A stretch of 64,000 nt of DNA from Mobula hypostoma (lineage: Eukaryota): contig NC_086129.1 of the NCBI RefSeq assembly GCF_963921235.1, positions 23,808,001-23,872,000 on the forward strand, read 5' to 3'. Shown one piece after another: positions 10,297-63,620 of the stretch. The notes under the pieces are model-generated. The model was not told the origin of the DNA. It saw only the letters and a program-made list of their open reading frames with translations, and made no database searches. How positions within the stretch are numbered: the first letter of the stretch is position 1; each line of letters opens with the position of its first letter. The translations under genes were made by a program, and so were the position numbers.

Positions 10297-11115
10297 TTAA
10301 ATAAGTGGAATGTCAATAAATCCATCATCCTGTATGTGGCCTTCCCACTGACGATCATCTTCTTCACCCTCCATTTGGTCTGGTGATCTTCCTTTAGGTT
10401 TCACCTTCTGCTTCAACTGATCTAATTCACTTCTGAACTTTTTCTTCAGCCCTGTACTCCAAGTCTCTAACCTATTGATCAGTTTCAATCGAGACCTCCC
10501 ATTGGATAGCTGCTGTAAAGATTCTGCATTTAGTTGCTTCAGGGCCCCAGGTTCTGACTGAGGGTCCCACAGGATGGGCCAAAGGGACAGATCCTGATCA
10601 ATAGGAAGGGTAGGACTGCCACTGGCTGCAGACAGGGAGTCATTGTCTCTCCTTAAACTGAGCGGGCCACTAAAATGATCTGCCTTTCGACAGATCAGAA
10701 TGATTGGCTCAGCTGCTCTCTCAGTGCTTGCATCCATCCTGCAGATCTGTGCTTGAGTGCTGCCATTTTTTGTTGCAATTGTAAAATCTTCAGTCTCACC
10801 ACCATTTAATCCCACCACCACTTCCTTCTGATAAGTACACGTCACTGAGTACTTCCTCATTTCATTTACCTTTACATTCTTGTGACTTGTTATCACCTTC
10901 TTGTCTTGTCCTATTTGCTGTCCATATACCTGCAATCCATTTTCAGCAACTGTGTGTTCCTTGATGTTATAAAATCTCACAGTGTTTGGTGATACAATGG
11001 ATGTAAAGCTGCTCAAATCCTCTCTCTTTTGGGGCACCAACAAGCCTTTCTCAGGGGCACCTATAGGTTCTTGGTCTGAATTCAGTTGATACTGTTTATT
11101 CCATTGTTCTACCAT
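10297..11115 (-). CDS. Uncharacterised 272-aa protein (single exon or terminal coding exon), copy 1
   Basis: 819-nt ORF outside any recognisable repeat; strong Kozak context (AAGATGG); ATTAAA on - at 10275-10280 just after the stop; no family recognised. Confidence 0.6.
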   Translation of the reverse strand: MVEQWNKQYQLNSDQEPIGAPEKGLLVPQKREDLSSFTSIVSPNTVRFYNIKEHTVAENGLQVYGQQIGQDKKVITSHKNVKVNEMRKYSVTCTYQKEVVVGLNGGETEDFTIATKNGSTQAQICRMDASTERAAEPIILICRKADHFSGPLSLRRDNDSLSAASGSPTLPIDQDLSLWPILWDPQSEPGALKQLNAESLQQLSNGRSRLKLINRLETWSTGLKKKFRSELDQLKQKVKPKGRSPDQMEGEEDDRQWEGHIQDDGFIDIPLI

Positions 11116-11617
11116 CTTAATGCATTGAACTCATAACAAGTTATTTCTTCTTATCTATTGTCAGCTATTCAAGCGCCATCAAAACTTTAAATGCAGTGTA
11201 TCGTAATTTTAACAGGCTGTCTGCCAGTTGCAGAGATGAAGTAATTTTTGGGCTTTGTGATGTTGGGTATCAGTGTAACAGGTTGCAAGTTGGTGTAACA
11301 GAGTAGTCCAACATCACTCATCACATGCAGTCTGGTCAGGATTGAACACTTACAGTACTTACCTGAAGTCTGTATTTCAGGAAAAGAAAACTCGCGCTTT
11401 TCTTCACTTCAAAGCTGTCAGCAAAGTGGGAGAGAATGTTGTGTGTTCAAGACCTGGTTCAATGATTTGATCACAAAATCCATATTAGTAGTTCATCGCA
11501 GAGTGGAGGGAGTGTTGCAGTGTCGGAGATGCCATCCTTTGTATGAGGCAGTAAGCTGTGGTTCAATCACTGTTTTATGATGGGTATCAGACATTTCATG
11601 ACACTACTTAGAAGCAC

Positions 11618-11742
11618 AAAGGGTTTTGGCCCGAAACGTCGACTGTACTTTTTTGCATAGATGCTGCCTGGCCTGCTGAGTTCCTCCAGCATTTTGTGTG
11701 TGTTGCTCAGATTTCCAGCATCTGCAGACTTTTTCTTGTTTG
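11618..11742 (+). repeat. Penelope-associated short repeat, truncated hammerhead (also 40251-40375)
   Basis: AAGGGTTTTGGCCCGAAACGTCGACTG...GATGCTGCCTGGCCTGCTGAGTTCCTCCAGC; CUGANGA is missing. Confidence 0.6.
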
Positions 11743-13544
11743 ATTACAGACATCATGTTGTCCAAGATAATATTTAAATATTATCAATAAAGTATTATAC
11801 AATTGGTTTCGTTTTGTGGAATCTTGATATGTGAAAATGTGCTGTGTGTTCCCTACAATCGTGGTCACAAAGAAGTACTTAGTTGGCTGCAAGCATTTTG
11901 AGATCCTCTGAGTAAAAACAATAAAATTTGCTTTCTGAAGTAAAACTCACTACCGAGGATGAACACTTACATTATATATTAAAGATATGGGTTTATTTAC
12001 AGGTTTTCTTGTGTGGAAAATGTGGAAATATGGAAAGGATGTATTTCTGTTGTTAATTTACATGATGCAGCCAACAATGGAAGGGCAACATTTCTTACCC
12101 AGCCCTGATAACCCAAGAGAACACGGCACTGTGCATCATGCTGGAACAGCTGCAGTCCTTTTGATGAAGATACTCCCACAGTGCCACCCTGTAAACAATT
12201 CTAGGATTTGACCCCGTGATGATGGACTTGCAGTATATTTCCAAGTCAGGATAGTGTGTGAATTATCCCCATGCAGCAGCTTCCTTTGCCCTTCTTGTTG
12301 GGAAATATGGATCTGGACAAACGTGTGGTGTGGCTTGGGCTAATATAGATCCTAAACCCCACAATCAAAGTATGCCAATAGTGGAGGGAGAGAATGATTG
12401 CAGTTGTGGATAGTGTCAGGTTTCCTTGACTTTAGATGTAGTGCAGATAAAGTGATCTTGTTTACAGAGGGAGAAAGTGACAAACTAGTCAGTCTGATAC
12501 CTATAGTGTCAAATTGTTGAGAAATGTTCTGAGGGGCAGCATAAAGAGAGATACATTATTCACGATCGGTCAGCATGGAATTGTAAAGTGCAGCTGTGTC
12601 TGATCAAGAATTGAATTTCTAGTGGATGCTCATGAGGACAGAGCAGTTCTATAGTACATGGTTTTTAACAAAGCACTTGACAAAGCCACAATGGCAGATT
12701 GATCATGCAGGCAAAAGCCAGGTAAGACTGTAGTCGGTTGGAATCCAGTGGTAAGTACAGTACTTCACCCGCTGGCAGCAAATATCTCACTTAGAAAGAT
12801 GACTGTTAATGTTGGAAGTCAGTTATCCTACGCCTGGTAAAATTCAATAGAGCAGTATCCTAAACCCAGAAAATATACACCAGGTTTATCAGTGGCCTCG
12901 CCTTCTAACATTTGACTTGGCGATGTTCACTGATGATTCAACTCAGTTCCATTGAAAAGTCTCAGCAAATGTTGTATTCATGCCTGCGTATAACATTCTG
13001 ATGGTGTTCTTTTCTTGTATAAACTCCAATTTTTCTAGCATGTTTATATTGTTCAATATTTCAAGCATTTGGAAGGGATTCTTTCAAGAAAACATGACTT
13101 GGAAAATAGGAGAGCAGAATCCAGGCCATATGCATAGTCTCCATTTTGATAGGAACTCAACTGGTTGATATTCATTGTTATTGAATAGCAAGTCTATCTG
13201 GGACTATAGAGCAATGCTGAAATTATCTCCAGGAGATGTGTCAGTGGACTGAACAAGCAGCAATATGGGATCTCTCTATCTCTTTCCACTTGTAAGCATC
13301 TTGTTGAAGATGTTATTAACAAAAAACCGAACCTCAGATGGAGGCAAAGCTGGTGAAACACATGGTTAATTTAAGAGAGTCTTATTTTGGGGATTGCTGC
13401 TATAATCTTCTGATGCCACAGCTGAAATGAGATGAAACACGTTACAACATGGCCAGATTTTTCCTTGTGCAGTTTTAGAGCCATAGAGTACTACAGCACA
13501 GAAACAGGCCCTTCGGCCTATCTAGTCCATGCTGACCTGATCTT

Positions 13545-15357
13545 TTTAAAAGAAGGATGTTGGCAAAAGACGGGGAACTATAGGCTAGTTACTTAACACC
13601 TGTAGTCGGGAAAATACTTGAAGCTGTTAAGGAAGAAATAGCGAAACATTTAGAAAGGAGTGGTTCCATTAGACAGACACAGCATGGAATCAGAAAGGGC
13701 AGGTCCTGTTTGACAAACTTACTGGAGTTCTTTGAGGATATAATGAGTGCAGTGGATAGAGGGGAACGGGTGGATGTTGTATGCCTGGATTTCCAGAAGG
13801 CATTCGATATGGTGCCGCACAAGAGACTTATAGATAAGATACGGATGCATGGAGTCGGAAGAAGTGTATTGGCATGGATAGTGGATTGGTTAACCAATAG
13901 AAGGCAGAGAGTTGGTACAAATGGGTGTTTCTTTGGTTGGCAGTCAGTGGTGAGTGGGGTGCCGCAGGGGTCGGTGCTGGGCCCGCAGCTGTTTACCATT
14001 TATATTGATGATTTGGAAGAGGGGACTGAGTGTAGCGTAGCAAAATTTGCTGATGACACTAAACTGAGTGGAAAAGTACAGAGGATGTGGAGAGTCTGCA
14101 GAGGGATATAGATAGGTTAAGTGAGTGGGCCAAGGTCTGGCAGATGGAAGACAACGTTGGTAAGTTTGAGATCATCTACTTTGGAAGAATAATAGAAGAG
14201 CAGATTATTATTTAAACGGTGAAAAATTGCAGCATGCTGTTGTGAAGAGGGACTTGGGAGTGCTTATGCATGAATTGCGAAAAGTTGGCTTACAGGTGCA
14301 ACAGGTTATTAAGAAGGCACTGGTGAGGCCGCACCTGGAGTACTGTGTGCAGTTCTGGTCTCCATACTTGAGGAAGGATATATTGGCTTTGGAGGCAGTG
14401 TAGAGGACGTTCACCAGGTTGATTCCAGAGATGAAGGGGTTAATCTATGAGGAGAGATTGAGTCACCTGGGACTATACTCTCTGGAATTCAGAAGAATGA
14501 GAGGGGATCTTATAGAAACATACAGAATTTTGAAAGGGATAGATAAGATACAAGTAGGAAAGTTGCTTCCACTTTAGAAGAATTAATAAAGGCATAGATT
14601 ATTTTCTAAACCAGGAGAAAATTAAAATATCTGAGGTGCAAAGGGACTTGGGAGTCCTCGTGTAGGACTCTCTAAAGGTTAACTTGCAGGTTGGTTCAGC
14701 GGTAAGGAAGGAAAAATGCAATGTTAGCATTCATTTCAAGAGGACTAGAATATAAAAGCAAGGATGTGATGCTGAGGCTTTGCAAGGCATTGGTCTGACT
14801 GCACTTGGAGTATCGTGAGCAGTTCAGGGTCCCTTATCTCAAAAAACATGTACTGGCATTCGAGAGGATCCAGAGGACATTCATTAGAATGATCCTTGGA
14901 AAGAAGGGGTTAACATATGAGGAGTGTTTCATGGCTCTGAACCTGTACTCTCTGAAGTCTATAAGCCTGGGGGATCTCAGAGAAACCAACTGAATATTGA
15001 AAGGCTAAGATAGAGTGGATTTTGGAGAGGATGTTTCCTACAGCAGGGAATCTAGGACCAGAGGCCACAGCTTGGAATACAAAGACGTCCCTTTAGAACA
15101 GAGATGAGGAGGAATTTATTTAGCCAGAGGGTGGTGAACCTGTGGAATTTATTGCCCAGATGGCTGTGGAGGCCAGGTCATCGAGTATATTTAAGGTGGA
15201 GGTTGACAGGTTCTTGATTAGTCAGGGCATCAAAGGTTTCAGGGAGAAGGCAAGAGAATGGGGTTGAGAGGGATAGTAAATCAGCCATGAGTGAATGGCC
15301 AAGTAGACTCAATGGGCCAAATAGCCTAATCCTGCTCCTGTACCTTATGGTCTTATG
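13545..15357 (+). mobile_element. Two adjacent CR1 fragments (also ~42178-43990)
   Basis: [29 protein letters not shown]; second fragment from ~14570 ends in a CTTATGGTCTTATGG tail. Confidence 0.88.
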
Positions 15358-15739
15358 GACAGTGAACTGTCGGGCACTGAAGAGTGAAGTAGAACAAAGG
15401 GATCTGGGAATACAGATCCTGGATAGTTTATATAGATTTTGGGATTGATTCCCAGATGAAGGAATTGTAGGCAAGAGATGCTCAACTTGTCACTGGTTTG
15501 CATTATCATCAACTATTTACCCATCTGACAATATTACATAATACCCTTACCACTGGATATGACAGCAGAATCTGAAAACAAGAAGGAAATCATTGAATTA
15601 GTTACTTGCAGCAAACTAATATTACAAAAGGATTCCATCTGTGTCAAATTGAAAAGCATTTAGAATGTGTTCTTTGATGACCCATCAAACTTAATGACAT
15701 CTTCTGGAATTTCCCGATCTAACTTTATATGGAGAGGTA

Positions 15740-17290
15740 CATAGAACATAGAACAGTACAATACAGGAACAGGCCTTTCAGCCCTCAATATTGTGTGGAA
15801 TTTAATTACCAATTTAATGGCCAACTAAACTAATCCCTACTGCCTACACAATGTCTTTCTCCTTCCATTACTCTCTCATTTATGTGCCTATCTAATTGTC
15901 TGTTAATAATCCCTAATGATTCTGCCTCTACATCCACCCCAGGCACCAACCACTCTTTGCACTCTCTCCGAAGTTTCAACGTGCTTCCATTAATGGGACG
16001 AACAGAACTGTATGTAATACTCCGTATGAGGCCAAACGAGACATTTATAAAGCTGCAACATACCTTCCTGGGTTTTGAAATCAATGCCTCAACTAATAAA
16101 TACAAGCCTATGTAGTCAATTTCAGGGAGCTATGAACTTGGACCCCAAGATCGCTCTGTTCACCAATACTTTTGAGGGTCCCTTAACAGTTACATTTGAC
16201 CTATTAAGGTGCAAAATTTCACATTTGGCTGGGTTAAACTCCATTTGCCATTTATCCGCCCAAATCCACGGCACCACCAATCTTCGTATCATCTGCAAAT
16301 TTATCAACCCACCCATCTATATTTTCATCCAGCTCATTTCTATACATGACAAACACCAGGTTCTAGTATAGATCCCAGCGGAACAGCATTAATCACAGAC
16401 CTCCAGGCAGAATAAGTCCCTTCAACCACAACCCTCTGTCTTCTATGAGCAAGACAGTTCCACATCCAAAAGGCCAATTCACCACTGATCCCATGCATCT
16501 TAACCTTCTGGAAGAGCCTCCCATTAGGGAGCTTGTCAAATGCTTCACTAAAGTCCATGTAGATAACATCAACATCTTCATCAATCACCCTCGTCATCTC
16601 ATCAAAAAACTCAAACAAGTTAGTAAGACAATGCTGGTACTCTCTAATTAGGCCATGGTTTTCCAAATGGTCATAAATCCTATCCTGAAGAATTTTCTCC
16701 AGTAACTTCCCTGCCACTGATGTAAGACTCATCAGTCTATAGTTTCCAGGATTATCCCTGGTTGGACATGCAGTCAAACAGTCTCATCGCTTGCCTCTCT
16801 CAATAACCTGGGCTACATCCCATCAGGTCCTGCAGATTTATCCAATGCAATTCCCTTTAAGAGATCTAATACTACCACCTCCCTTACCTCGAAATGCTCC
16901 TGGCATATTAATACTCTCAACACTGACCTCCCTATCCTCCACTCATTAATGACCTCACCCACGTCCGCCACATCTAAGAATAAAGATCCTTAAGAATCCT
17001 ACCCTCTCTATAGTTAACTCCTTGCATTTGATGTAGGTGTAGAATGCCTTGGGATTCTCTTTAATCCTACTTGCCGAAGTCATTTCATGGCACTTCCTGG
17101 TTTTCCTAATTCCCCTCTAAGAGTTTTTTTCCTGGCTTCTTTATATTCCTTAAGGGCTCTGTTTGATTCTAGCTTCCTAAGCATTACTTACTTTCCCTTT
17201 TCTTTCTTGAATAAATTCATTATCTCCCTCAACATCCGAGGTTCTCTTACCTTGCCATCCTTGTCCTTCCTTCTGACTGGAACATATGTG
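15740..17290 (-). mobile_element. Decayed CR1 (also ~44373-45923)
   Basis: NPGNYRLMSLTSVAGKLLE, CLTNLFEFF, WADKWQMEFN; CATAGAACATAGAAC tail. Confidence 0.82.
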
Positions 17291-17894
17291 TACTCTACTC
17301 TTGACAGGTATATTTATATCCATCAAATTCTTTCTTATCTGAAGTCCTTTAAATACCAGTGTTGCAAAGACTCAAAACTGAGCTTCTGTTGCCTTTGCCT
17401 TTAACTATCTTGCAACCGTAACTGCACAGCTTTCTCGCCAGGATATAAGGAGGTAATCATTGACAATATATCATAAATCTCAATGATAATCCTGAATGTC
17501 AGAATGAACCTAACGTTGGTCCTTGTGAACTCAAACGCTGCTTTACTTTTTCACTAAACTGTCAAATGCAAATTTCATTCAAAGACATACGAACAGCACA
17601 AAATTACAGTTTCTAAGCTCTTTTTGTCAAGAATAGCTTTTTCTTAAACAATTGTCTACTGCCAAACTAACACTGATGTAATAAATAGATGCTATATTAT
17701 AAAGTCATAAAGCACTGTCTATGCTGACCATCAACAATCCATTTTACGTGAATCCCATTTTTTATTCACTTGATTCTCTCACCAACTCCCCCCACCCTCA
17801 CAGATCCTACCACTCAACTACACACGTTATCCCACCAACCTGTATGTGTTTGGTATGCAGGAGGAAACCAGATCACCATGAGGAGACTATTTAA

Positions 17895-19086
17895 ACCATA
17901 TGACCATAAGACACAGGAGCAGAAGGAGGCAGCTTGGTATATCGAGTCTGCTCTGCTATTCAGTCAAGGCTGATCCTTTTTTACCCCTCCTCAGCCCCAC
18001 TCCCCAGCCTTCTCCCCGTAGCCTTTGATGCCATGGCCAATGAAGAACCTATCAATCTCTGCCTTAAATACACCCAACGACCTGGCCTCCACAGCTGCCT
18101 GTGATAACAAATTCCACAAATTCACCACCCTCTGACTAAAAAAATTTCTCTGCATCTCCGTTTTAAATGGATGCCCCTCTATCCTGAGGCGGTGCCCTCT
18201 TGTCCTAGACTCCACCACCATGGGAAACATCTTTTCCACATCTACTCTGTCTAGGCCTTTCAACATTCAAAAGGTTTCGATGAGAACCCCCCTCGTCCCT
18301 CTAATTTCCAGCGAGTACAGGCCCAGAGTCATCAAATATTCCTCAAATGATAACCTTTTCATTTCCAGAATCATCCTTGTGAACCTCCTCTGCATCCTCT
18401 CTAATGCTAGAACATCTTTTCTTAGATAAGCAGCCCAAAACTATTCACAATACTCAAGGCGAGGTTTCACCAGTGCCTTATAAAGCCTCAGCATCACATC
18501 TCTGCTCTTATATTCAAGACCTCTTGAAATGAGTGCTAACTTGGCATTTGCTTTCCTCACCACTGACTCAATTTGCAAGTTAACCTTTAGGGTGTTCTGC
18601 ACAAGGACTTTCAAGTCCCTCTGCATCTCAGATTTTTGAATTTTCTCCCTGTTTAAAAAATAGTCTGCACATTTATTTCTTCTACTAAAGTGTATGACCA
18701 TACATTTTCCAGCATTGCATTTCATTTGCCACTTTCTTGCCCATTTTCCTAATCTGCCTAAGTCCTTCTGCAGCCTTCCTGTTTCGTCAAAAACTACCTG
18801 CCCCTCCACCAATCTTCATATCATCTGCAAACTTGGCAACAAAGCCATCTATTCCATCATCTATATCATTTATATACAGCATAAGAAGAAGCGGTCCCAA
18901 CAGCGACCCCTGCGGAACACCACCAGTCACTGGCAGCCAACCAGAAAAACATCCTTTTATTCCCAGTCGCTGCCTCCTACCAATCAGGCAATGCTCTAAC
19001 CATGTTAGTAACTTTCCTGTAATACCAATGGCTCTTAACTTGGTAAGCAGCCTCATGTGTGGCACCTTGTCAAAGGCCTTCTGAAA
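17895..19086 (-). mobile_element. CR1 RT and 3' end (also ~46530-47724)
   Basis: DFQKAFDKVPH, GVPQGSLLGP, KFADDMKIGG, RNFFSQRVVNLWN. Confidence 0.88.
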
Positions 19087-19900
19087 GTCTGGGCCCATTG
19101 TTGTTTGTCATCTGGATGATAATGTGGTAAATTGGATCAGCAAATTTGTGGATGACATTAAGATCAGGGCGTAATGGACAGCGAAGAAGGCTAACAAAGT
19201 TTGCAATGGGATCTGGACAACACGAAAAATGGGCTGAAAAATGGCAGGTACAATTTAATGCAGACAAGCCTTGATGTGTTGCACTAAGGATTGTGGTAGA
19301 ACAGAAGGATATGGGAATACAGATTCATAATTCCTTGTAAGTGGTGTCACAGGCAGATAAGGTCACAAAGAGAGCTTTTGGTACATAGACCTTTAAAGTC
19401 AAAGTATTGAGGACAAGAGTTGGGATGTTGTGTTGAAATTAGAGAAGACATTGGCGAGGCCAAAGTGGAGTTATAGTCACCTACTGTACCTACAGGAAAG
19501 ATCCAAAAGATTGAAAAAGTACAGGGAAAATTTAAAGGATATTGCCGGAACTTGAGGACCTGAGTTATAGGAACAGATTAAACAGGTTAGGACTTTGTTC
19601 CCTGGAGTTAGGAAAATGAGGGGTATAGATAGGTTGAGACTAGATCTAAAGGTTAAGGGTGAAAAGTGAAAAGTTTAAGGGAACATGAGGGGAAACTTCT
19701 TCACTCAGAAGGTGGTGTGAGTGTGGAAGAAGTTGCCAGCAGAGACACTGGTCAGAACATTTAAGAGAAATTTGGATAAATACGTGGATGGGAGTGGCAT
19801 GGATGGCTATGGTCCAGGTGAGAGTTGATGGGACTAGGCAAGATCACAGTTGGGCACAGACTAAATGGGCCGAAAGGCTTGTTTCTGTGATTAGTCCTCT
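19087..19900 (+). mobile_element. Decayed CR1 fragment (also ~47725-48535)
   Basis: CR1-like RT end and 3' UTR (ATGGGCCGAAAGGCTTGTTTCTGTG). Confidence 0.7.
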
Positions 19901-20469
19901 ATCACTGAGTCTAAGATGACTCCCCAGACTCTGCAGCGGTAGTGTGAACTCCTTTAACCAATGACAAAGCAGGCCTTAACCTTCGAACTGATGACACCAG
20001 CACCCATGAATGTTTAATGCAAGGTGGAAGTAAAAGACCATTGTATGCTGCTTGGTATTACTAAACATAATCTGTAGTCTTCATGTTCCAACGGCTCTTA
20101 CACTTAATATGACAATTAGAAGTTTGCCTTCAAGTCATTAAAGTCACATTGCATGGTATTCCAGGAAAACAGAGACTGGATATTACATATCTGTCTGTCT
20201 TTCAGAGTCAAGCATGTGGAACAGCTTGGCGAACTGGTACTTGGGAGTAATATTCCTGATTAAACCTATTATACTTGCAGATAGTTGATAGCTCCTCAGT
20301 GCATACAATATTATCTCTGGGTTATCACTACAAATTTCACAGCTTCATTTTAAATCATTACCTTGTGATAAGGCATTGTTTGAGGAACAGATGGAAACTG
20401 CAAACAGAAGGAAATTATTAAGGAGAGCACCAATGGTGAGTTAAAACTAGTGACCAGGAATGATTCCAA

Positions 20470-21035
20470 TTTTTGGCTAAGTATCATGAACACAATCCCT
20501 GCTTATCTGTTGAAATGATTGAGACATCGAGGTGAATGCCAAATGCGAGCGAGAGTTTACCGCCAACCGCCTTCCTTTTGATTGCTGCTGAGAAGGTGTA
20601 TGCGACTGGCCTGTCGCTGTATGGTTCACTGCCGCTGGTGGGTAGGGCTTTGTGTTTGAGTGGTTTCTCTCTCTTTGTTGACAAAGGAAGATGTTACTGT
20701 GGTTCTGTGTTATGGATTGGACTATTGTGTTTATGGACTGAGGACTTTCTCAGTAATATGGTTTTCATATTCTGTGTTTTTCGCCCATTTCTTTTCATAT
20801 TTTTGTGTGAATGAAAAGGGTGTGGGGGGTCGATATTAGTGTTCCGTTTTGTGTGGGGGAAGGGGAGTTTGGGGGCTGATAGTGTTCCTTTTTGTGCGGG
20901 TGTGGGTTTTGATGTTTCTCTTTGAATGACTTTCCTGTTGTTTGTTTCGTGGCTATCTGGAGAAGATAAAACTCAGAGTTGTGTATAGACACATGCTTTG
21001 ATAATAAATGAACCTTCGACCTTTGACCTTTGAAA
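20470..21035 (+). repeat. Unclassified interspersed repeat with LINE-type tail (also ~49107-49661)
   Basis: Ends CTCAGAGTTGTG..GATAATAAATGAACCTTCGACCTTTGACCTTTGAA, similar to the Rex1 tail at ~59215-59283. Confidence 0.5.
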
Positions 21036-35624: not shown

Positions 35625-36137
35625 ATGAGCAGCACAACCACCTTCCGAGGCCTGGACTCCAAGGCTCGCCGCAGTTGCAGGGTGTTGCAGCCTCCAGGTG
35701 GTAAATCCAGTATCTCATTGGGGGTGGAGGAAAATGTCAAACCAGTGCATTCCCGTCCAAGCAAAACTGCATCCAATACCTTCGGGCCACCATTGCAAAA
35801 TCAACCTGTGACTAGAAGAAGGAACCCGCCAGATGGAAAAAGTAGTGGTATCTTTCCGGCAGCTACCACTGAAACACCTGATCTAAAGCAACAGAGAAAT
35901 CCTCCTGCTGGCAAGACAAGTGGCATCTGTGACGTTGTGGAAATACCTCCCAAAACTCCGGATATCGCAACTGGGGAAGGTGAAAATAGCCCAGGTTCCT
36001 CCGAAACTGAAAACCAAATGGAAGCCCAGGGAAAGAAAGGAGAATGTGTGCCTGGGCCAGTACAGTCTGCTCAAACTGAACCAGTAAGGCGCAAGAGAGT
36101 CCCACCTGGTGGATGGTCTACCATTGTGCTGGGGTAA
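35625..36137 (+). CDS. JPT1: Intronless Jupiter-family (JPT1/HN1-like) gene, copy 2, 170 aa
   Basis: Same as copy 1 apart from one CAG>CCG (Q>P) change seen; AATAAA 36174-36179; upstream in-frame ATG at 35556. Confidence 0.85.
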   Translation: MSSTTTFRGLDSKARRSCRVLQPPGGKSSISLGVEENVKPVHSRPSKTASNTFGPPLQNQPVTRRRNPPDGKSSGIFPAATTETPDLKQQRNPPAGKTSGICDVVEIPPKTPDIATGEGENSPGSSETENQMEAQGKKGECVPGPVQSAQTEPVRRKRVPPGGWSTIVLG

Positions 36138-50769: not shown

Positions 50770-53700
50770 CCTAGATCCTTCTGTTCTACTGCATTCTTCA
50801 ATGCCCTACCATTTACCATTTATCAAGTTGTACCTGGTTTTCTTGCACAGACTTGGGTTACCAGACTCAAATGCCACAGACCTAGCCCTCAGCAGAAGGT
50901 TAACCTTGTAGTTCATCCACAGCTTTTGATTTGGGAAAGTACAACAAGTTTTCATGGGCACACACTCAACCACACCGGTTTTAGTGATGTTGCTAAGAAC
51001 TATGGCATACTTATCCAGATTGGAAGATGAATGCCAGTCCACTGATTCAAAGCAGTGTTATAAGTGCTCCTGTGCTTCCCTTGTCCCTACCTTCTTGGTC
51101 CTCACTACTGGTGCTGCAGTCTTCAGTCTTTGCCTATACTCAGGGAATAGAAGCACAGCCAGGTGATCAGACTTATCAGTCTTTCTGAAGTGTGGGCGTG
51201 GGATAGCGCGATAAACACTATTGATAGTGGTGTAACAGTGGTCCAGTGTGTTGGTTCCTCTGCTACTACAAGTGATTTATTGATGATAATTATTTAGTGG
51301 CTTTATCAAGGTGGAAAGTTACAGGAAAGATACTAGCATGGACGGAAGATTGAGTGACTGGCAGGAGGCAAAGTACGGGAGTAAAGGGGGCCTTTTCTGG
51401 TTAGCTGCCAGTGACTAGTGGTGTTCTGTTACATTCAGTTTTGGGACCTCTTCTTTTCATGTAATATGACATCGTTTTGAATGATGGAATTGATGGGTTT
51501 ATCACTAAGTTTGTGGACAATACGAAGATAGGTGGAGGTGCAGATATTATTGAGGAAGCAGGGAGTCTGCAGAAGGACCTGGGCAGATTGGGAGAATGGG
51601 CAAAGTGGCACATGGAATATAGCGCAGGGAGATATATGGTCATGCAGTTTGGCGGAAAAAATAAAGGCATAGACTATTGTCTAAACGAGGAAGAAATTCA
51701 AAACGGACAGGTGCAAAGAGACTTTGCAGTCCTTGTGCAGAATTCCTTGAAGGTTAACTTGCAGGATGAGTCATTGGTAAGGAAGGCAAATGTAATGTTA
51801 ACATTCATTTCAAGAGGACTAGAATGTAAGAGCAAGGATATGATGCTGATGCTTTATAAGGCATTGGTCAAACCACACTTGGAGTATTTGAGCCCCCATC
51901 TAATCAAAGATGTGCTGGCCTTGAAGAGGTCCAGAGGAAGTTCACGAGAATTATTTTGTAATAGAGGGACGCCCATTTAGAACAGAAATGAGGTGGAATT
52001 TCTTTAGCCAGAGGATGGTGAATCTGTGGAATTCATTGCCATGGAAGGCTGTGGAAGTCATTGAGCATATTTAAAGCAGAGATTGATAGGTTCAAAGTTC
52101 AAAGTAAATTTATTATCAAAGTAGATATATGTCACCATATACAATCCTGAGATTCATTTTCCTGTGGGCATATTCAGTAAATCCATAATAGAATAATAAC
52201 TATAATAGAATCAATGAAAGATTGCACCAGCCTGGGTGTTCAACCAGCATGAAAAAGACAACAAGCTGTGCAGATACAAAAAGAAAGAAATAATAATAAC
52301 TAAATAAATAAACAATAAATATTGAGAACATGAGATGAAGAGTCCTTGAAGTTGAGTCCATAGGCTATGGGAACATTTCAATAATGGGGCAAATGAAGTT
52401 GAGTGAAGTTATCCCCTTTGGTTCAAGAGCCTGATGGTTAAGGGGTAATGACTGTTCCTGAACATTTCTTGTTGCAGGAAACATACAATTTCCCTGATTG
52501 AGGAAACATATAATTAGGCAAGAGGAAAGTTTAGGTAGGGCGTGATTGGCAAAGGCCCTTTCTGAGATGATGTTAAGGTGCTTTGGATGGTGAAATTCTT
52601 ACCTCTCGTCTGAGCTGATGAGCCAGTCAAGGTGCTGCATTGTCAGGTTGGTGCTGTAAAAGCTTAGAATGGTGATTCTAGATACTATATAATCCAAGAT
52701 GGCACCAAGCTGTGAACTCTGTTGAGTTGTGGCTCAGATTTGTTTTTTAAAGTTTGTAAGGATGGTGTTGGGGACAGAGAGTGGATTTACGGATCAGCTT
52801 AGGGTTTTTATTTTAATGTTACAGCACAGTACAGGCCCCTCGGCTCACAATGTTGCTCCAAAGGGCTTGTACTGTTTAGGGACAGGAATGAGGAATTAGA
52901 GATCAGGCCAGTCTAAGTCTCTGCTTCGCGTTCAAAGGCGAGTAATGTAGAGGTGATCGAATGTCAGATGCCGGGTTAGCAGAGAGTGGACAAGGGTCAT
53001 ACCCCTTCCCCCACCCCTTGTCAGCAGGTTCTGGAGTCGGATTTCCGTGCGGGCATGAGGAACAAGTTCCAATGACCAACAGTGTACGCAAGTTGAAGTG
53101 GCCGTAGTTCAAGGTCTAGTGTTCAGAGTCCCGTCATCAGTGAGTCCGGAGTTCAAGGCCCTGTGGTTGATGATTGGTGTGTCCTGGAATCGATGCCAAA
53201 GATCGAGGCCCAAGGGTGAACTGGAAGTCCAGAAGTCATGGCCCATTGGCCTGAGCTGAGTTTACAAATCTCTACGAGTCCACTGGAGGCTGGAGACCTT
53301 TTCTGTGGTTAAAGGACTGTGTATGTGCATGGGTGGGAGGGAGACCTGGCTTGTTTTGCTTGCTGTGTTCTGTGTTGTTCTGCCAGGCATTGTCGGCATG
53401 CTATGTTGGTGCTGGAATGTGTGGTGTCATTCGCGGGCTGTCCCAGCACACCCTCGGACGTGTTGGTTGTTATCGCAAACAACGTATGTATGTATGCTTC
53501 GATGTACACATGATAAATAAATTTTAATCTTCAATCTTGAATCTTGGTGGTGTGATGATTCTGTTATGTTTTCCTTGTAACAACCACAGTTGTATACTTC
53601 TGTTGCAGATAGGACTACTTTAAAACATGCCTGGGATATCTTGGTGTGCAAAGGATGTTGCCAGGTTAGGAAGTCAGAGAACCAGTCAATGCAAATTACT

Positions 53701-57108: not shown

Positions 57109-57872
57109 AAGAATTTTTTTCCCATTTTTCAATGGGTACAGAGCAAAGAAAGTAGATATCAAGCCTGTGCTCGCTCTTTGAAAGAGTTGGCCAATATTTC
57201 AACTTGATCCATTTCCTTGCTGTTTCTTCATTGTGCTGTAATTGCTTCCTCCCCATGTCTATCCAAATCCCTATTGATAGTTGGCATTAAGTGTATCTGC
57301 CACATGCATTCCAGATAACATTGAAAATAAATTCTTTTCACGTTGCCTCTAACTCATTTGACAAATACCTTAAGTGAGCATGCAGTCAGTTTATTTACCA
57401 AGTCTTGATTTAATAGCTGTTTTGCAATGAGAACTTCAGGTGAGATGCTTTTCTTTAAACATTTGCAAACCATCATACTTGCATAGAGTGCAAATATTTG
57501 CCTTGCATTTAAAAGATGCATTTTAAAATTAATTTTTGCTGAGTTTCACAGACAATGATTGAAAATTAAAAAAAACACTGCAGAAGCTGAAAATGTGAAT
57601 TAATAACTGAAAATGCAGGAATCAGTCAGCAGGTCAGGCAGCATCAGTGGAATGGGAAATGGAGTCAATAGTTCATGTCAAAAACCCTTCACCGGGACTG
57701 GAAATGTGAGAAAACATAGTTTGAAGTTGCAGCGAGGATTGGGAGGAATAGGTAGGACAAAGGGAATATCTGTGACACTGAATAAACTATTCTTGGGCTT
57801 CCAGCCACGTACAAGAAGCCCACGAAGAGTTTATTTGTCGTATATGCCAGGAAAGCATTAGATCTTTTTTCA

Positions 57873-59720
57873 TTTGTGGCACCATTTTGTCGGTTGCTTC
57901 ATATTCACCACATCTGCTCCCAGGATGAGGCTTTCCTTTCCAGGACATCAGAGATGTCCTCCTTCTTCAAAGAGCAGGGTTTCCCTTCCTCCACTATTGA
58001 TGCTGCCCTCACCCACATGAGGGAACACTTCACCTGCAAATCGGTTTGGATCGTCTACTGCAGGGGTTCCAAACCTGGGGTCCATGAACCCCTTGGTTAA
58101 TGGTAGGGGTCCTGGGCATTAAAGAAGTCTACTGTATCCGTGCTTCTGAAATGGTATCCTCTATATTGGTGAGACCCAACATAGATTGGGGGCACCGCTT
58201 TCTTGAGCACCTTCATTCCACCTGCAACAAGCAGGGTTTCCCCGTGGCCAACCGTTCTGACATGTCTGTCCGCGGGATCCTGTACTGTCATGATGAGGCC
58301 CGTTATCAGGTTTGAGGAGCAACACTTCATATTTTGTCTGGGTAGTCCGCAACCTACTCACTGTGCTCACTCTACTCACTCTACACCTATGACTGTGAGG
58401 CTCAGTACGACTCCAAACCATATACAGGTTTGCTGATGATACCACTGTTGTGGGCTGTATCTAAGGGGGTGATGAATCAACACACAGGATTGAAAATTTG
58501 TCTGAGTGGTGTAATAACAACAACCTCTCAGTCAATGTCAATAAGACCAAGGAACTGATTGTAGACTTCAGGAAAGGGAAACCAGAGGCCGATGAGCCAG
58601 TAATCATCTGAGGATTAGAGGAGGAGAGGGTCAGTAACTCTAAGTTCCTGGGTGTCACTATCTCGGAGGACCTGTCCTAGACTCATCATATAAATGTTAT
58701 TGTAAAGCAAGCACGACAGCACCCCTACTTCCTCAGGAGTTTGTGGAGGTTTGGCATGTCGTCAAAAACATTGGCAAACTTCTATAGATGTGTGGTGGAA
58801 AGTGTGCTGACTGGCTGTATTACAGCCTGGTATGGGAACATGAATGCCTTTAATTTGGCCCAGTATATCTTGAGTAAAACCCTCCCAACCATTGAACACA
58901 TCTGCCATGAAACATTGCCGTAGAAAAGCAGCGTCTATTATCAAAGGTCCTTACTTCCTGCCATCAGGAGGGAAATACAGATTCCTCAGGACTTACACCT
59001 CCAGATTCAAGAACGGTTACTACCTCTCAACCATCAGGCTCTTGTACAAAAGGGGTATCTATATTCACTTAAATACTGATTTACGTTGTTATTTCATGCT
59101 CATTAATTATTGCTATTTATTTATATCTGCATTTGCACAGTTTGTTGTCCATTGATCCTGTTTTTACAGTTACTGTTTTATAGATTTGCTAAGTCTGCCC
59201 ACAGAAAAAAATAATCTTAGAGTTGTATGTGGTGACATGTATGTACTCCGATAATAAATTTTACTATGACCTTTTCAACTTTGAACCTGATGGCATGAAA
59301 ATAGGTTTCTCCAACATTCGGTAATTTTTCCCCTCCCTCTTCCCTCTCCCTTAATTCCCCACTCTTCCCCCAACCCCTTACCTTTTCTCTTCCCATGACC
59401 TCCCTATCATCTCCCCCTGGTGCCCTCCTTCCCTTTCTCCCATGTTCCTCTCTGCATTCCTATCAGACTCTCCTATCTCCATCTTCTCCAGACCCTTACC
59501 TTATCTACCTGTCACCTCCCAGCTACTTACTTCATAGCCCTCCCCCTCCCACCTGGTTTCACCTATGATCTTCTAGCCTTTTCTCATTCTCCTCCACTCC
59601 ACTTTCTTATTCTGGCTTCTTCTCCCTCCCTTTCCAGTCCCAATGAAGGGTCTCGGCCCAAAATGTCGGCTGTTTATTCATGTCCATAGATGCTGCCTGA
59701 CCTGCTGAGTTCCTCCAGCA
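57873..59720 (+). mobile_element. Penelope-like element in copy 3, interrupted by Rex1/Babar (~58358-59283), retaining a pyrimidine-rich 3' part and a degenerate hammerhead (~59635-59672)
   Basis: GIY-YIG motifs at 58020-58357; resumes with AACCTGATGGCATGAA at ~59284; CAGTC-CCAATGA-AGGGTCTCGGCCC-AAAATGTC-GGCTG. Confidence 0.6.
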
Positions 59721-61252
59721 TGAGTATCTAATCCATTTCTTCCTAACTTTGCTGAATTCAATTTCAAAACATGCCTCAGTGTATTGTGGACTTGAGCAGT
59801 TCCTCCCTGATTGCTTTACTCTGTCCTTTAAAGCTCACTAATATGGAGTTGGTGCACTTGCCAATTTGTTGGATTTTAGTGCCAGATTCTCTCAGTATAG
59901 TGGTTTCCATTTCATTTCATTCCTTGCTTTAGACTGAGTAAAGATTGCATACTTGGTGTGTTGTTTATAGTCTGTCATAAGCCCCGTCTTAATAAGATAA
60001 TCAAAATTCAGTTAAAAACCTGAAAGAGTATAGAATAATACAAATACATTCTCAGACTAAAAGTATAACTGATCATTCTTGCCTTTTCTGAAGGATGCGA
60101 ATCTGCCTGATGTTTGTTTTACGATGAATGATACTATCCAATCATACGTCATTTGCCCGAAAAGGTAAATTAACTATGTTGTAACAGTCATGATCTTCCC
60201 TCCCTCCTGGTCTTTGGTGAACTGACAGCCTTGTTCTTCTTCTTTTTTAGTTTAGTGGCGGTTGGCAACCAGTTTTCAGTGCATTACCGCCACCTGCTAG
60301 ACTTGGGGTGTTCCAACCAAGTATGTCCTGGAGTTCTCTACTTTAGACAATCTAGTTTAGCCTGCAGTTCTCTGTCAGCTTCACTCTGTAGTTGCAATTC
60401 CTCGTGACTGTTTAATGCGCTCATTAGATAATGCCGCAAACTGCTATTCTTCCCTAATTATGTCACGTTTTCGTGTAGTTGCATTACCTCAATTACATTG
60501 ATTTCATCTACATCACTTGTAAGACTAAAATCATCTTGTTAAAGAATAGTAATTATCGCACGTTATACTTTTAAACTTCTTGTTTTTCCAAGTCTATCTG
60601 CTTTTTCAGGTTTTCCTTTTCTTGGATCATAGCCTGCAGTTGTTTACTGAGACCTTGGAGTTCTTCTTCATTTGCTTCCATGTTTTCATTTTATAATCTG
60701 AATGTGGATAGTTCACTTTGCAACAAATTCCTTTTCTTTTTGTATCCTTGTAATAATTTGCTCCATTTTCCAATCTCTTTTCCAACTCACAGTTGTTCTT
60801 GTCGGGTGCATCTATTTGTTGTTGGAGTTCTGCACATTTAACCTGGGCTTCAACCATAAAATCTGAGGATTTTCCTTAAGTTCTGAAACATATTTCTTTC
60901 ATTCTTGACCATTTGCGATAAATATGTTGCCATTAAGATTCCATCTCCCCTGCCTGTGAACTGCTGGATTCTCCATTCAGCGTTTCTTTGACTTCCTTCC
61001 ACCTAATTCCTTTAATACCAAGATACTTTTCTGCAGACCGGACGATAATTTTAATCACACACCTTAAGCAGGTCTTGAGTTCATTGTGATGTTTGCTGAC
61101 ATCATGAAGTGTAACAATGGCATAGCATCATCAGATGTAACCTCTACAGGACTCCTTTGGGTACTGTATCAATAGCAGCCTAAATGTACGTAATAACCTG
61201 GTGGTTATTATACCTATCAATAGTTTGGTATCTCATCTGCGGATCGGAAGAC

Positions 61253-61765
61253 ATGAGCAAGACAACCACCAACCAAGACCTGGACTCCAAGGATCGCAGC
61301 AGTTCCAGGGTGATGCAGCCTCCAGGTGGTGAATCCAGTATCTCATTGGGGCTGGAGGAAAATGCCAAACCAGTGCATTCCCGTCCAAGCAAAACTGCAT
61401 CCAATATCTTTGGGCCACCATTGCAAAATCAACCTGTGGCTAGAAGAAGGAACCCGCCAGGTGGAAAAAGTAGTGGTATCTTTCAGGCAGCTACCACTGA
61501 AACACCTGATCTAAAGCAACGGAGAAATCCTCCTGCTGGCAAGACAAGTGGCATCTGTGACATTGTGGAAATACCTCCCAAAACTCCGGATATCGCAACT
61601 GGGGAAGGTGAAAATAGCCCAGGTTCCTCCGAAACTGAAAACCAAATGGAAGCCCAGGGAAAGAGAGGAGAGTGTGTGCCTGGGCCAGTAGAGTCTGCTC
61701 AAACTGAACCAGTAAGGCGCAAGAGAGTCCCACCTGGTGGATGGTCTACCATTGTGCTGGGGTAA
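61253..61765 (+). CDS. JPT1: Intronless Jupiter-family (JPT1/HN1-like) gene, copy 3, 170 aa, divergent
   Basis: Intact ORF with SSSRVMQPPGG, ASNIFG, NPPGGKSSGIF and PPGGWSTIVLG*; 18 aa differ from copy 1; AATAAA 61802-61807; upstream in-frame ATG at 61184. Confidence 0.85.
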   Translation: MSKTTTNQDLDSKDRSSSRVMQPPGGESSISLGLEENAKPVHSRPSKTASNIFGPPLQNQPVARRRNPPGGKSSGIFQAATTETPDLKQRRNPPAGKTSGICDIVEIPPKTPDIATGEGENSPGSSETENQMEAQGKRGECVPGPVESAQTEPVRRKRVPPGGWSTIVLG

Positions 61766-63620
61766 ATCCACTGTTCACCTCAGTGTATCAGCTGCAGACT
61801 GAATAAACATTGATTTTATTGTAACCTTAAAATTTGAGCGTCACCATTTTGTATTGGCACTTTACATTTGAATGGTCCATAGGTGCTCAAAACATGAGGC
61901 CTGCTGGAAAAGGCACGCGTCATTTATTCCCTGTGATGTGAAGTACTGAGTGTTTGTTTTTCTTGTGACTTCAGACTTAATTCTGGCATTTTTGACTTGG
62001 TATTTGGATGTGATTTGTGATTGGAAAAAAAAATTGGCATGCTCTGGGCTTTGATGATGCTGGACTTGTTGATTTTCTGTATTATTGGATGTTGGAATTC
62101 CCCAACATACTTTTAATACTCTTTTTTAAAATCTTACCCAGTATTATAAAAACTTTTCCAATGAATTTGTTAAACTTAAAGTTGCAGGAAATAAAGTTTA
62201 AAGAGAGTTGAAGGGAGTGTGGAAACCAAGGATTTGTCAAGTTGGAAGGAGCATGACAAACAACTCTGGTGATGCCAAATCATTGAGGTTTCCACATAAT
62301 TGGATGATGGATTACCGGAACTTTACTCTAATTTCAGTATCATGGCAAACTCATGTGTATCCCCAGCCCATTAAATACCGAATACAGAACTCTGAGCAAC
62401 ACTCCCTTTGCAAAGTTTAAATCTTTAATGGTTCGGTCAAGGGATGAAAGTTCCTCATGTTCATGCGAGGAACATGGGACTGTGAATGGAGCTCAGTTGC
62501 AAACTGAGTGACCTCAAAGTCAGGAGGAATTGTCTCTCTTCCTGTTTACCACACCAGATTAATTTCTGTTTGAGCAGCGTAAAGAATGGCCTCTTGGAGA
62601 ATTAGAATTAGATATTGCCACCATTTTGATGTGCTCCTTTTTGGTCCATTCTGATGACCCCATCAGTCCTTCTTCACTTAAACCTAGGACCCGATAGCCA
62701 GCTGCTTCTGACAGGAAATATCCTTTCTTGTCTTGTAGCACTGTGGTTTGCGCGAAGCTTCTACAGCTTAGGGTGTCAGAGTTTGGAGTTTAATTCCGAC
62801 ACCATTTGTAATGAGTTTGTACGTTCTCCCCGTGACCGCGTAGGTTTTGTCTGGGTGCTCTGGTTTACTCCCACAGTCCAAAGACCTACTGGTGAGTAGG
62901 TTAATTTGTCATTATAAATTGTCCTGTAATTAGGCTACTGTTAAATAGTTGGGTTGCTGGGTTGGGCTGCAAGGGCCTGTTCTGCGTTGTGTCTCTAAGA
63001 CAAATAAACTATAGAAATTTCCATAATTTTCCTGAGATGCAGGGGTCTGCAGGTGCTGGAAACTGGAGCAACACACACAAAAGCCAAAGGAACTCAGCAG
63101 GTCAGGGAGCACCAATGGAGGGAAGTGGACAGTCAATGTTTTGGGTTGAGAGCCTTTATCTGGACTGATAGTTTTCTCCTATTATGATAGAGCAAGGAGA
63201 ATCTTATACTACCCTTTGCACACAGAATCATTTCTTAACATCTCTCACGATAATGTGTCCAATTGTTACACTGTATCCATCCCAGACTTACAAATGTTAG
63301 CTATCGTTTCTCCCTATCTACTATGCCTGTTTTCCTAAGTATGTCAAATTAAGTGCCTGATCTTCTGGAAGTCCTGTTCACGTAATTGATCTGTGTAACT
63401 CAACTGTTGATCTGAGTACAAAGACATCTCACTCTGTGGAGGAGAAGTGAGCCAGAGGAGATTTAGATGTGCCTTACTATTTCCGAGCTATAGTGACATG
63501 ATTATACAAATAATTTATTCAGTGTATAAGTCAAAGAACCTGAAAATTGGAAATAATTTTCATCACAATTGTTTGTGTAGATTGGAAGCCTATGTTTTGC
63601 AATTTCCCTACCCTTAGATG

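What the first reader, a model, noticed from the sequence alone, without database searches (positions are those of the whole stretch)
61253..61765. JPT paralogs show a strong excess of amino-acid-changing substitutions
Seen (manual codon comparison, copy 1 versus copy 3, 170 codons): 22 nucleotide differences, 20 non-synonymous (18 residues) and 2 synonymous. Thirteen fall in the first 38 codons (11 residues, none synonymous). Immediate flanks differ at only about 2/197 nt upstream and about 3/400 nt downstream. The one copy 1/2 difference is also non-synonymous. Changes shift N-terminal charge (R8, R16, K27 versus D9, D14, E27), and copies 1/2 break one PPGG repeat (PPDG). No stops or frameshifts in any copy. 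Inference: positive selection on a normally conserved microtubule-associated protein, reminiscent of ampliconic germline or conflict genes.
Basis: partly seen in the sequence, partly recalled or inferred. Interest (0 to 1): 0.85.

Follow-up and report, generated by a model that had tools for sequence, protein, structure and literature searches.

The report
Fast-evolving amplified JPT retrogenes in Mobula
Three intact, intron-less copies of a microtubule-protein gene (JPT1b) in a devil-ray chromosome differ almost only by amino-acid changes. The cluster at the protein's start is a patch of older ancestry shuffled between copies, and the case for adaptive evolution is suggestive (p about 0.02), not proven.

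Summary
The counts are correct: copy 3 (61253-61765) differs from copy 1 (6998-7510) at 22 nt, 20 non-synonymous and 2 synonymous. Thirteen fall in codons 1-38, none synonymous. All three ORFs are intact.

The genes are processed retrocopies of JPT1b in Mobula hypostoma. They belong to a family of at least 9 distinct 170-aa proteins there and 3 in M. birostris. The scan also noted an intact triplet 3.3 Mb upstream (s1-142455).

Pairwise codon ML gives omega about 4.2 (p about 0.02) and a spectrum-preserving permutation gives p = 0.03. The signal lies wholly in the N-terminus; the rest is not significant.

The contrast between clean flanks and a divergent CDS is not a valid neutral yardstick. 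The array units are mosaics, with 0.07-2.4% divergence by block and non-coding clusters of 11-15 substitutions. The family fails the four-gamete test at 74 of 351 site pairs. Copies 1/2 keep parental residues where most other copies in both species are derived (all at 14, 21, 27, 38), so the N-terminal tract is older than its flanks.

Conversion explains the clustering but not the 13:0 ratio. The N-terminus, the most conserved part in shark and ray orthologues, is the most variable part here.

Verdict: a real, lineage-specific retrogene family. Positive selection is plausible (about 0.5) but not separated from relaxed constraint.

The parts
61253..61765 (+). Copy 3: intact intron-less 170-codon JPT1b-like ORF, carrying the common family N-terminal type (K3 N7 D9 D14 M21 E27 L34 A38)
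   Evidence: Its protein equals P0023. It is 78% identical over full length to Hypanus sabinus JPT1b isoform X3, E = 1e-72.
6998..7510 (+). Copy 1: intact 170-codon ORF with a divergent N-terminal type (F7 R8 G9 A14 R16 C18 L21 K27 V34 V38) and PPDG at codon 70
   Evidence: Its protein equals P0032.
35625..36137 (+). Copy 2: differs from copy 1 by one non-synonymous change (Q78P)
   Evidence: Its protein equals P0002.
61237..62034 (+). Body of the processed retrocopy: the part collinear with the spliced parental JPT1b mRNA (short 5' leader, CDS, 269-nt 3'UTR)
   Evidence: An 889-nt contig of a probable RNA run (X15, depth 75) lies on 61237-62034 with 58 differences. The contig ends at the A-run.
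62026..62034 (+). A9 run, a poly(A)-tail remnant at the 3' end of the retrocopy
   Evidence: sequence. The parental mRNA contig ends here.
61627..61628 (+). Position of a parental exon-exon junction (after codon 125), with no intron in the window copies
   Evidence: The X15 contig carries a 26-nt cassette here that reads ...NSPGSFRAGN*. Hypanus isoform X4 diverges from X3 at the same residue, and the S. canicula short isoform ends ...DSFRTGQ. The X21 contig starts at 61631.
61260..61365 (+). N-terminal hypervariable tract: 13 differences between copies 1 and 3 in 106 nt, all non-synonymous (5 transitions, 8 transversions). Its possible limits are 61232-61406.
61535..61537 (+). Codon 95 GCT: the third PPGG repeat is broken (PPAG) in copies 1, 2, 3, P0001 and P0027
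   Evidence: Alignments. Repeat function is taken from PMC12773733.
7205..7207 (+). Codon 70 GAT in copy 1 (the same in copy 2): the second PPGGK repeat is broken (PPDG)
58745..61055 (.). Sequence specific to unit 3, directly upstream of the retrocopy. Two inserted blocks (58745-60111 and 60232-61055) flank a 120-nt piece shared with units 1 and 2. Copy 3 therefore has a different upstream context beyond 197 nt.
269..21034 (.). Segmental-duplication unit 1. It matches unit 2 (28897-49661) at 99.27% over 20.8 kb. Unit 3 (50770-64000) matches in blocks only.
51300..51738 (.). Non-coding control tract (unit-3 coordinates). At 15 sites units 2 and 3 agree against unit 1, while the rest of this 3.1-kb block is almost identical in all three units. 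This is a conversion-like patch outside any JPT sequence.
57769..57875 (.). Non-coding control cluster: 11 substitutions in 106 nt between unit 3 and units 1/2

Best explanation
The three ORFs belong to a Mobula-specific, amplified family of processed retrogenes. They were copied from the long-isoform mRNA of the multi-exon JPT1b gene and then multiplied by tandem (about 1.5-1.9 kb) and segmental (about 26-28 kb) duplication along one chromosome.

The copies exchange sequence by gene conversion or unequal recombination, so each copy is a mosaic. The 13-difference N-terminal cluster between copies 1/2 and copy 3 is a tract of about 110-175 bp of deeper ancestry. It sits in younger, homogenised flanks. 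Copy 3 carries the common family N-terminus. Copies 1/2 carry a rare older lineage that keeps parental residues and has added its own changes.

Within the family the ancestral constraint on the N-terminus is gone, and replacements there have accumulated faster than silent changes. The most likely reading is diversifying or positive selection on the N-terminal 38 residues. Those residues lie outside the three PPGGK*S repeats that dock JPT proteins in the microtubule lumen. The charge of the N-terminus swings from +3 to -2, while the ORF is kept open.

Shown: retrocopy origin, family size, mosaicism, the N:S counts and the inverted constraint profile. Inferred: that selection rather than drift drove the replacements, and that the proteins are made.
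For: Retrogene origin:
- The 513-nt ORFs are uninterrupted.
- A spliced parental mRNA contig is collinear from 61237 to the A-run at 62034. It carries a 26-nt cassette exactly at the residue where the Hypanus and Scyliorhinus isoforms diverge.

Family:
- There are 9 distinct 170-aa proteins in M. hypostoma and 3 in M. birostris.
- Neighbouring copies lie at 1464/1912-bp spacing.

Mosaicism:
- 74 of 351 informative site pairs fail the four-gamete test.
- Unit genealogy switches between blocks, and block divergence ranges from 0.07% to 2.4%.
- Non-coding clusters of 11-15 substitutions exist.
- Copies 1/2 share the parental letters at 61271, 61272, 61278, 61313 and 61352, but not the parental markers at 61276, 61345 and 61348.

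Selection:
- N:S is 20:2, omega 4.2-4.3, LRT p about 0.02.
- Permutation gives p = 0.03; the N-terminus is 13:0, p = 0.019.
- Variable sites number 13/38 in the N-terminus vs 20/132 elsewhere in Mobula copies, against 3/38 vs 65/132 in 10 shark/ray orthologues (p = 2e-5).
- All three window ORFs and every annotated neighbour are exactly 170 codons, while non-coding flanks carry 6 indel events per 83 substitutions.
- Both N-terminal haplotypes appear as separate contigs in a DNA run, so they are not assembly errors.
Against: - Significance is marginal (p about 0.02-0.03), and the finding was picked because it looked extreme.
- The N-terminal region was chosen after seeing the data.
- Codons 39-170 give omega about 1.6-1.8, not significant, and 2.26% divergence. 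That matches the 2.37% of a neighbouring non-coding block.
- Without copies 1/2, amino-acid variation is spread evenly (7/38 vs 19/132), as relaxed constraint predicts.
- Two of the three microtubule-docking repeats are broken in copies 1/2 and one in copy 3.
- One M. birostris copy has ATG changed to ACG and survives only in a 91-kb chimeric gene model.
- The only retrocopy-type RNA trace is a 173-nt contig at depth 3, against 75 for the parent.
- Annotated proteins are a biased sample, because pseudogenes are not listed.
Confidence: 0.5

Rival explanations
1. Young retro-pseudogenes are drifting neutrally. The copies lost JPT function on retroposition, and replacements accumulate at the neutral rate. 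The 20:2 ratio is a chance extreme in a small sample. The ORFs are still open only because the copies are young and keep being overwritten by conversion from intact copies. The N-terminal cluster is simply a conversion patch from an older copy.
For: - Amino-acid changes are spread evenly once copies 1/2 are set aside.
- Residues invariant across sharks and rays are hit freely, including the PPGG glycines.
- Omega outside the N-terminus is not different from 1.
- Divergence of the rest of the CDS equals that of non-coding block B.
- One M. birostris copy has lost its start codon.
- The retrocopy-type RNA signal is about 4% of the parent's.
- Comparable substitution clusters occur in non-coding DNA.
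Against: - Omega = 1 is rejected at p about 0.02-0.03.
- N:S of 13:0 in the N-terminus is unlikely even for an old neutral tract.
- Variable sites are enriched in codons 1-38 against a uniform spread (p = 0.02).
- From the rates I estimate that three of three window ORFs staying intact has a probability of roughly 0.07 under neutrality.
- All 12 known proteins keep exactly 170 aligned residues with no indel.
Confidence: 0.38
2. Patchy conversion by the parental JPT1b gene. In this reading the ancestral-looking N-terminus of copies 1/2 was copied recently from the multi-exon parent gene or its cDNA, so the cluster merely imports parent-versus-retrocopy divergence.
For: Copies 1/2 match the parental mRNA at 61271, 61272, 61278, 61313 and 61352, giving F7, G9, L21 and V34.
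Against: - Interleaved parental markers are absent from copies 1/2: 61276 (silent), 61345 (silent) and 61348 (F32).
- Five to six of the differences (R8, A14, R16, C18, K27) occur neither in the parent-like outgroups nor in any other copy.
- A parental tract should bring silent differences, and there are none.
Confidence: 0.04
3. The differences are an artefact of assembly or read polishing in a repeated array, for example chimeric or mis-polished copies.
For: The region is a high-identity segmental duplication, where assemblers can err.
Against: - Both N-terminal haplotypes occur as separate contigs in run X1: records 2 and 3, with 0 and 15 differences, exactly as expected. X1 may, however, be the sample the assembly was made from, so it is not fully independent.
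- A related F7/G9/L21-type contig exists in a second organism's DNA run, X5.
- Identical proteins are in the NCBI annotation.
Confidence: 0.02

Closest known systems
JPT1/HN1 and JPT2/HN1L (Jupiter family, Pfam PF17054), specifically elasmobranch JPT1b
   Same: Full-length collinear homology: 78% identity to Hypanus sabinus JPT1b isoform X3. The length is the same (170-171 aa). The four PPGG repeats are laid out in the same way, and the protein has an intrinsically disordered, low-complexity character.
   Different: The copies are intron-less, multi-copy and restricted to Mobula. The N-terminus, nearly invariant in orthologues (3/38 variable sites), is the most variable part here (13/38). One or two of the three PPGGK*S repeats needed for microtubule-lumen localisation in human JPT2 (PMC12773733) are broken. 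The Pfam score falls below the curated cut-off for copy 3 (20.8 vs 27 bits), and copies 1/2 give no hit.
Lineage-specific amplified retrogene or ampliconic gene families with rapid protein evolution (general class, from established knowledge of mammalian and Drosophila germline multi-copy genes)
   Same: Origin from a housekeeping parent, tandem and segmental amplification, concerted evolution by gene conversion, intact ORFs, and dN/dS above 1 in part of the protein.
   Different: Germline expression, sex linkage and palindromic architecture are not shown here. The statistical support for omega above 1 is marginal. The RNA evidence for the copies is very weak.
Processed pseudogene arrays (retrocopy plus flank duplicated as DNA)
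   Same: Intron-less body, a poly(A) remnant, LINE reverse-transcriptase fragments in the same units, and loss of ancestral constraint.
   Different: No stop or frameshift occurs in any of the 3 window copies or the 12 known proteins, and replacement changes exceed silent ones instead of matching them.

Membership tests
Jupiter/JPT family (PF17054) | Significant match to the family profile at Pfam's gathering score | tested here: not met
   Copy 3 scores 20.8 bits against a cut-off of 27. Copies 1/2 have no hit at E <= 0.01. Several bona fide elasmobranch JPT1b proteins also lack a precomputed Pfam hit, so the profile is weak for this clade.
Jupiter/JPT family (PF17054) | Full-length homology to named JPT1/JPT2 orthologues | tested here: met
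   E values run from 1e-72 to 1e-40, at 55-78% identity and 100% coverage, against JPT1b of rays, sharks and chimaera.
Jupiter/JPT family (PF17054) | Four PPGG repeats, the last three of the PPGGK*S type | tested here: inconclusive
   Copy 3 reads PPGGESS, PPGGKSS, PPAGKTS, PPGGWS. Copies 1/2 read PPGGKSS, PPDGKSS, PPAGKTS, PPGGWS. The motif definition comes from PMC12773733. The repeats are present but partly broken.
Processed retrogene | Coding sequence lacks the parent's introns | tested here: met
   The ORF is a continuous 513 nt. A parental exon junction after codon 125 is marked by a 26-nt cassette in the mRNA contig and by the isoform split in Hypanus and Scyliorhinus.
Processed retrogene | Poly(A) remnant at the 3' end of the mRNA-derived part | tested here: met
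   An A9 run lies at 62026-62034, exactly where the parental mRNA contig ends.
Processed retrogene | Target-site duplications flanking the insert | tested here: not met
   No direct repeat of 8 nt or more was found between 61101-61260 and 62021-62080. This is expected to fade with age and does not argue against retroposition.
Positively selected gene (omega > 1) | dN/dS significantly above 1 in a codon-model test | tested here: inconclusive
   The pairwise GY94 LRT gives p about 0.02 and permutation gives p = 0.03. Only one independent pair is available, and recombination is shown. Site models on all copies could not be run because the DNA of the other copies was not retrievable.
Ampliconic germline/conflict gene | Germline-restricted expression | not testable with these tools
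   Run and tissue names are coded. Only contigs were available, and there is one weak retrocopy-type contig.
Ampliconic germline/conflict gene | Sex-chromosome linkage or sex-biased copy number | not tested
   No comparison of male and female read depth was possible.
Ampliconic germline/conflict gene | Multi-copy array of near-identical units homogenised by gene conversion | tested here: met
   Units are 99.3% identical over 20.8 kb, and a 3.1-kb block is nearly identical in all three units.

The most novel reading that the evidence does not exclude
Manta and devil rays have turned a retrocopy of a microtubule-lumen protein into a multi-copy gene family. In this reading the N-terminal 38 residues are under diversifying selection and are kept as distinct, trans-specific types despite homogenisation of everything around them. 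This would be a new, lineage-specific arms-race or germline-conflict module built on the JPT scaffold. A recruited upstream start might even add a hydrophobic leader.
Probability: 0.2. Interest if true: 0.65.

Novelty: new member of a known kind. Interest (0 to 1): 0.42.

Why it matters
JPT1/JPT2 are small, disordered proteins that are conserved across animals. Recent work ties them to the microtubule lumen and to NAADP calcium signalling. I found no report of a lineage-specific amplification or of a rapidly evolving JPT paralog.

If selection is confirmed, the family offers a natural mutational scan of the N-terminus, the one conserved JPT region with no assigned role in microtubule docking. 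It would also be a rare example of an amplified, fast-evolving retrogene family in a cartilaginous fish.

If selection is not confirmed, the locus is still a clean textbook case. It shows how gene-conversion mosaics in segmental duplications can mimic 'clean flanks, divergent gene' signals of selection.

Tried and rejected
- **DNA of other copies.** I tried to fetch the DNA of the other family copies and of outgroup genes with the look-up of encoding contigs. Mobula records return no DNA because the file is too large. Hypanus and Cetorhinus proteins are not on record. Codeml-style site or branch-site tests on all copies were therefore impossible.
- **Read laying.** The single call returned only 40 of 113 variant rows, and a high-copy repeat at 62790-62900 swamped the contig list. 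The parental CDS and the M. birostris copies could not be fully reconstructed.
- **Overlapping frame.** This is rejected. Both alternative frames contain stops in all copies.
- **GC-biased gene conversion or CpG decay.** This is rejected as the source of the cluster. The polarised changes are mixed and rather A-rich, with 5 transitions and 8 transversions. The transition/transversion ratio does not differ significantly from non-coding DNA (p = 0.14).
- **Flank-based neutral yardstick.** The p = 9e-6 result is rejected as invalid because of the mosaic unit history.
- **Ribozymes and bacterial motifs.** Rfam finds no family at gathering score anywhere in the window, and none of relevance at E <= 1 in 63400-64000. 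The bacterial promoter/terminator scan is irrelevant to this genome.
- **Literature.** Searches found no paper on JPT retrogenes or on a Mobula JPT expansion.

Full report
**1. What is there**

The stretch 61253-61765 is an uninterrupted 513-nt ORF. It has two further copies in the window, at 6998-7510 and 35625-36137, which are 95.7% and 95.5% identical to it. The three lie in a segmental duplication. Units 1 and 2 are 99.27% identical over 20.8 kb. Unit 3 matches them only in blocks at 97.4-99.9% identity.

The proteins are full-length homologues of elasmobranch JPT1b: 78% identity to Hypanus sabinus isoform X3, E = 1e-72. Identical sequences are annotated in Mobula hypostoma on a 49.6-Mb chromosome.

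**2. The observation**

- Copy 1 vs copy 3 has 22 differences, 20 non-synonymous and 2 synonymous, changing 18 residues.
- Thirteen differences fall in codons 1-38, changing 11 residues, none silent.
- The upstream flank has 2 differences in 197 nt. The first 400 nt downstream have 3.
- The single copy 1/2 difference is Q78P, and copies 1/2 read PPDG.
- No copy has a stop or frameshift.
- Net charge of residues 1-38 is +3 in copy 1 and -2 in copy 3.

**3. The genes are processed retrocopies**

A contig from a probable RNA run of the same organism (X15, 889 nt, depth 75) lies collinearly on 61237-62034 with 58 differences. It ends at an A9 run at 62026-62034.

That contig carries 26 extra nucleotides exactly after codon 125, which read ...NSPGSFRAGN-stop. 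Hypanus isoform X4 diverges from X3 at the same residue, and the short Scyliorhinus canicula isoform ends ...DSFRTGQ. The contig is therefore the spliced short-isoform mRNA of the true multi-exon parental gene.

Position 61627/61628 is a parental exon junction that has no intron in the window. The window copies derive from the long-isoform mRNA. The parent carries F7, G9, L21, F32, V34, E58, F102 and P151, the states seen in outgroup species.

**4. The family**

Cluster look-up gives 9 distinct 170-aa proteins in M. hypostoma and 3 in M. birostris.
- Gene ranges are 513 nt, so the genes are intron-less.
- Some copies sit 1464 and 1912 bp apart.
- The scan independently noted an intact triplet 3.3 Mb upstream of this window (s1-142455).
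- One M. birostris protein (P0026) has Thr in place of the start Met and belongs to a 91-kb gene model. It is a start-loss copy rescued by a chimeric prediction.

**5. Is omega above 1?**

| Test | Region | Result |
|---|---|---|
| Nei-Gojobori | whole CDS | dN 0.0535, dS 0.0165, omega 3.2, Fisher p = 0.07 |
| Pairwise Goldman-Yang ML (kappa about 3.3) | whole CDS | omega 4.2-4.3, LRT 5.2-5.4, p about 0.02 |
| Pairwise Goldman-Yang ML | codons 1-38 | omega at the upper bound, p = 0.005-0.009 |
| Pairwise Goldman-Yang ML | codons 39-170 | omega 1.6-1.8, p about 0.5 |
| Spectrum-preserving permutation | whole CDS | P(2 or fewer silent) = 0.03 |
| Spectrum-preserving permutation | codons 1-38 | P(0 silent) = 0.019 |
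| Spectrum-preserving permutation | codons 39-170 | p = 0.48 |

The excess is nominally significant and lies entirely in the N-terminus. It rests on one independent pair, and that pair was picked because it looked extreme.

**6. The flank contrast does not hold as a neutral yardstick**

Non-coding divergence between units 1 and 3 is 0.54% in block A, 2.37% in block B and 1.15% around the gene.

Three-way site patterns show a switch in genealogy.
- In block A, 15 sites group units 2 and 3 against unit 1. All 15 lie within 51300-51738, and the remaining 2.7 kb or so is nearly identical in all three units.
- In blocks B and C, units 1 and 2 group against unit 3.

Non-coding DNA has its own clusters, for example 11 substitutions in 106 nt at 57769. 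Patches of foreign ancestry are therefore a general feature of this array.

At the protein level, 74 of 351 informative site pairs fail the four-gamete test. For example, the K3/N7/D9 N-terminus occurs with both the AGKTSGIC and the GGKASGIF middle types.

**7. Ancestry of the N-terminal tract**

Copies 1/2 keep the parental F7, G9, L21, V34 and V38. At positions 14, 21, 27 and 38 every other copy in both species shows the derived D14, M21, E27 and A38. D9 is shared by all other copies except P0027, which keeps G9 and F7. L34 is confined to M. hypostoma copies.

Copies 1/2 lack the parent-specific markers at 61276, 61345 and 61348. They are therefore an early retrocopy lineage, not a recent conversion from the parent.

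Copy 3's N-terminus is identical in protein to five other family members. A second organism's DNA run also contains an F7/G9/L21-type contig alongside an I7-type contig.

The flanks of copies 1 and 3 differ by 1.1%. That is about half of the 2.35% between copy 3 and the second organism over 61841-62821. The N-terminal tract is thus older than its flanks.

It does not explain why all 13-15 steps are replacements. Conversion moves differences around but does not change their N:S ratio.

**8. The constraint profile is inverted**

Among 10 shark and ray orthologues, only 3 of 38 N-terminal sites vary, against 65 of 132 elsewhere. Among the 12 Mobula retrocopy proteins the counts are 13/38 and 20/132. 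The contrast gives p = 2e-5, and enrichment against a uniform spread gives p = 0.02.

Without copies 1/2 the spread is about even (7/38 vs 19/132). An even spread is what plain loss of constraint predicts.

In human JPT2, the last three PPGGK*S repeats mediate microtubule-lumen localisation and the N-terminal repeat does not (PMC12773733).
- Copies 1/2 have broken repeats 2 and 3 (PPDG, PPAG) and turned repeat 1 into PPGGKSS.
- Copy 3 has broken repeat 3.

This fits either decay or a shift of function.

**9. Expression**

Only contigs were available. Beside the parental mRNA (depth 75), one 173-nt contig with 3 differences from copy 3 lies on 61687-61859 at depth 3. This is weak evidence that some retrocopy is transcribed. 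Tissue identity is unknown.

**10. Verdict**

Firm conclusions:
- The object is a real, previously undescribed, Mobula-specific amplified JPT1b retrogene family with pervasive gene-conversion mosaicism. No literature on it was found.

Open question:
- Positive or diversifying selection on the N-terminus is the single most likely reading, at about 0.5.
- Neutral drift of young retrocopies is a close rival, at about 0.38.
- The decisive test needs the DNA of all copies, which these tools could not fetch.
- Conceptually this is a new member of a known kind.

Noticed in passing
window 61184-61252 (also 6929-6997 and 35556-35624): An in-frame upstream ATG extends each ORF by 23 codons (MYVITWWLLYLSIVWYLICGSED), a hydrophobic, signal-anchor-like leader. 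The peptide is identical in all three copies, and both upstream nucleotide differences (61207, 61231) are silent in this frame. The M. birostris model P0026 reads the same frame (..WYLIYGSED). This could be chance: a 23-codon open stretch has p about 0.3. It could also be a recruited start.
   Followed up: partly
window 10297-11115 (-) and 38930-39748 (-): A 272-aa ATG-started ORF with no Pfam match is duplicated with units 1 and 2, about 2.8 kb downstream of each JPT copy on the opposite strand. The unit-3 equivalent would lie beyond the window end.
   Followed up: partly
window 62790-62900: A very high-copy repeat. The summed contig depth jumps from about 14 to over 100,000 in both DNA runs. 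Loose ends read GGTTCAATTCCCGCC, a tRNA-like box, which suggests a tRNA-derived SINE. It swamped the read-laying output.
   Followed up: no
window 63400-64000 and the whole window: Rfam finds no ribozyme (HDV-like, hammerhead or other) at gathering score anywhere in the window. At E <= 1 in 63400-64000 the only match is an irrelevant weak hit. Other first-stage notes propose ribozymes at 63630-63810 and 50651-50769.
   Followed up: partly
window 23732-25459 (-), 47422-47904 (-), 54893-56894 (+): LINE-type reverse-transcriptase ORFs and fragments (RVT_1, E = 1e-39 for the 575-aa ORF) lie between and inside the duplication units.
   Followed up: partly
window 28843-32051 vs 50770-53979: Units 2 and 3 differ at only 3 of 3210 nt here (99.9%), while the gene-bearing blocks of the same units differ by 1-2.4%. 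This is evidence of very recent homogenisation of part of the unit.
   Followed up: yes
M. birostris protein P0026 (not in the window): A family copy with the start codon changed (Met to Thr) is annotated as a 205-aa protein in a gene model spanning 91 kb. It is either a chimeric transcript or an annotation rescue of a disabled copy.
   Followed up: partly
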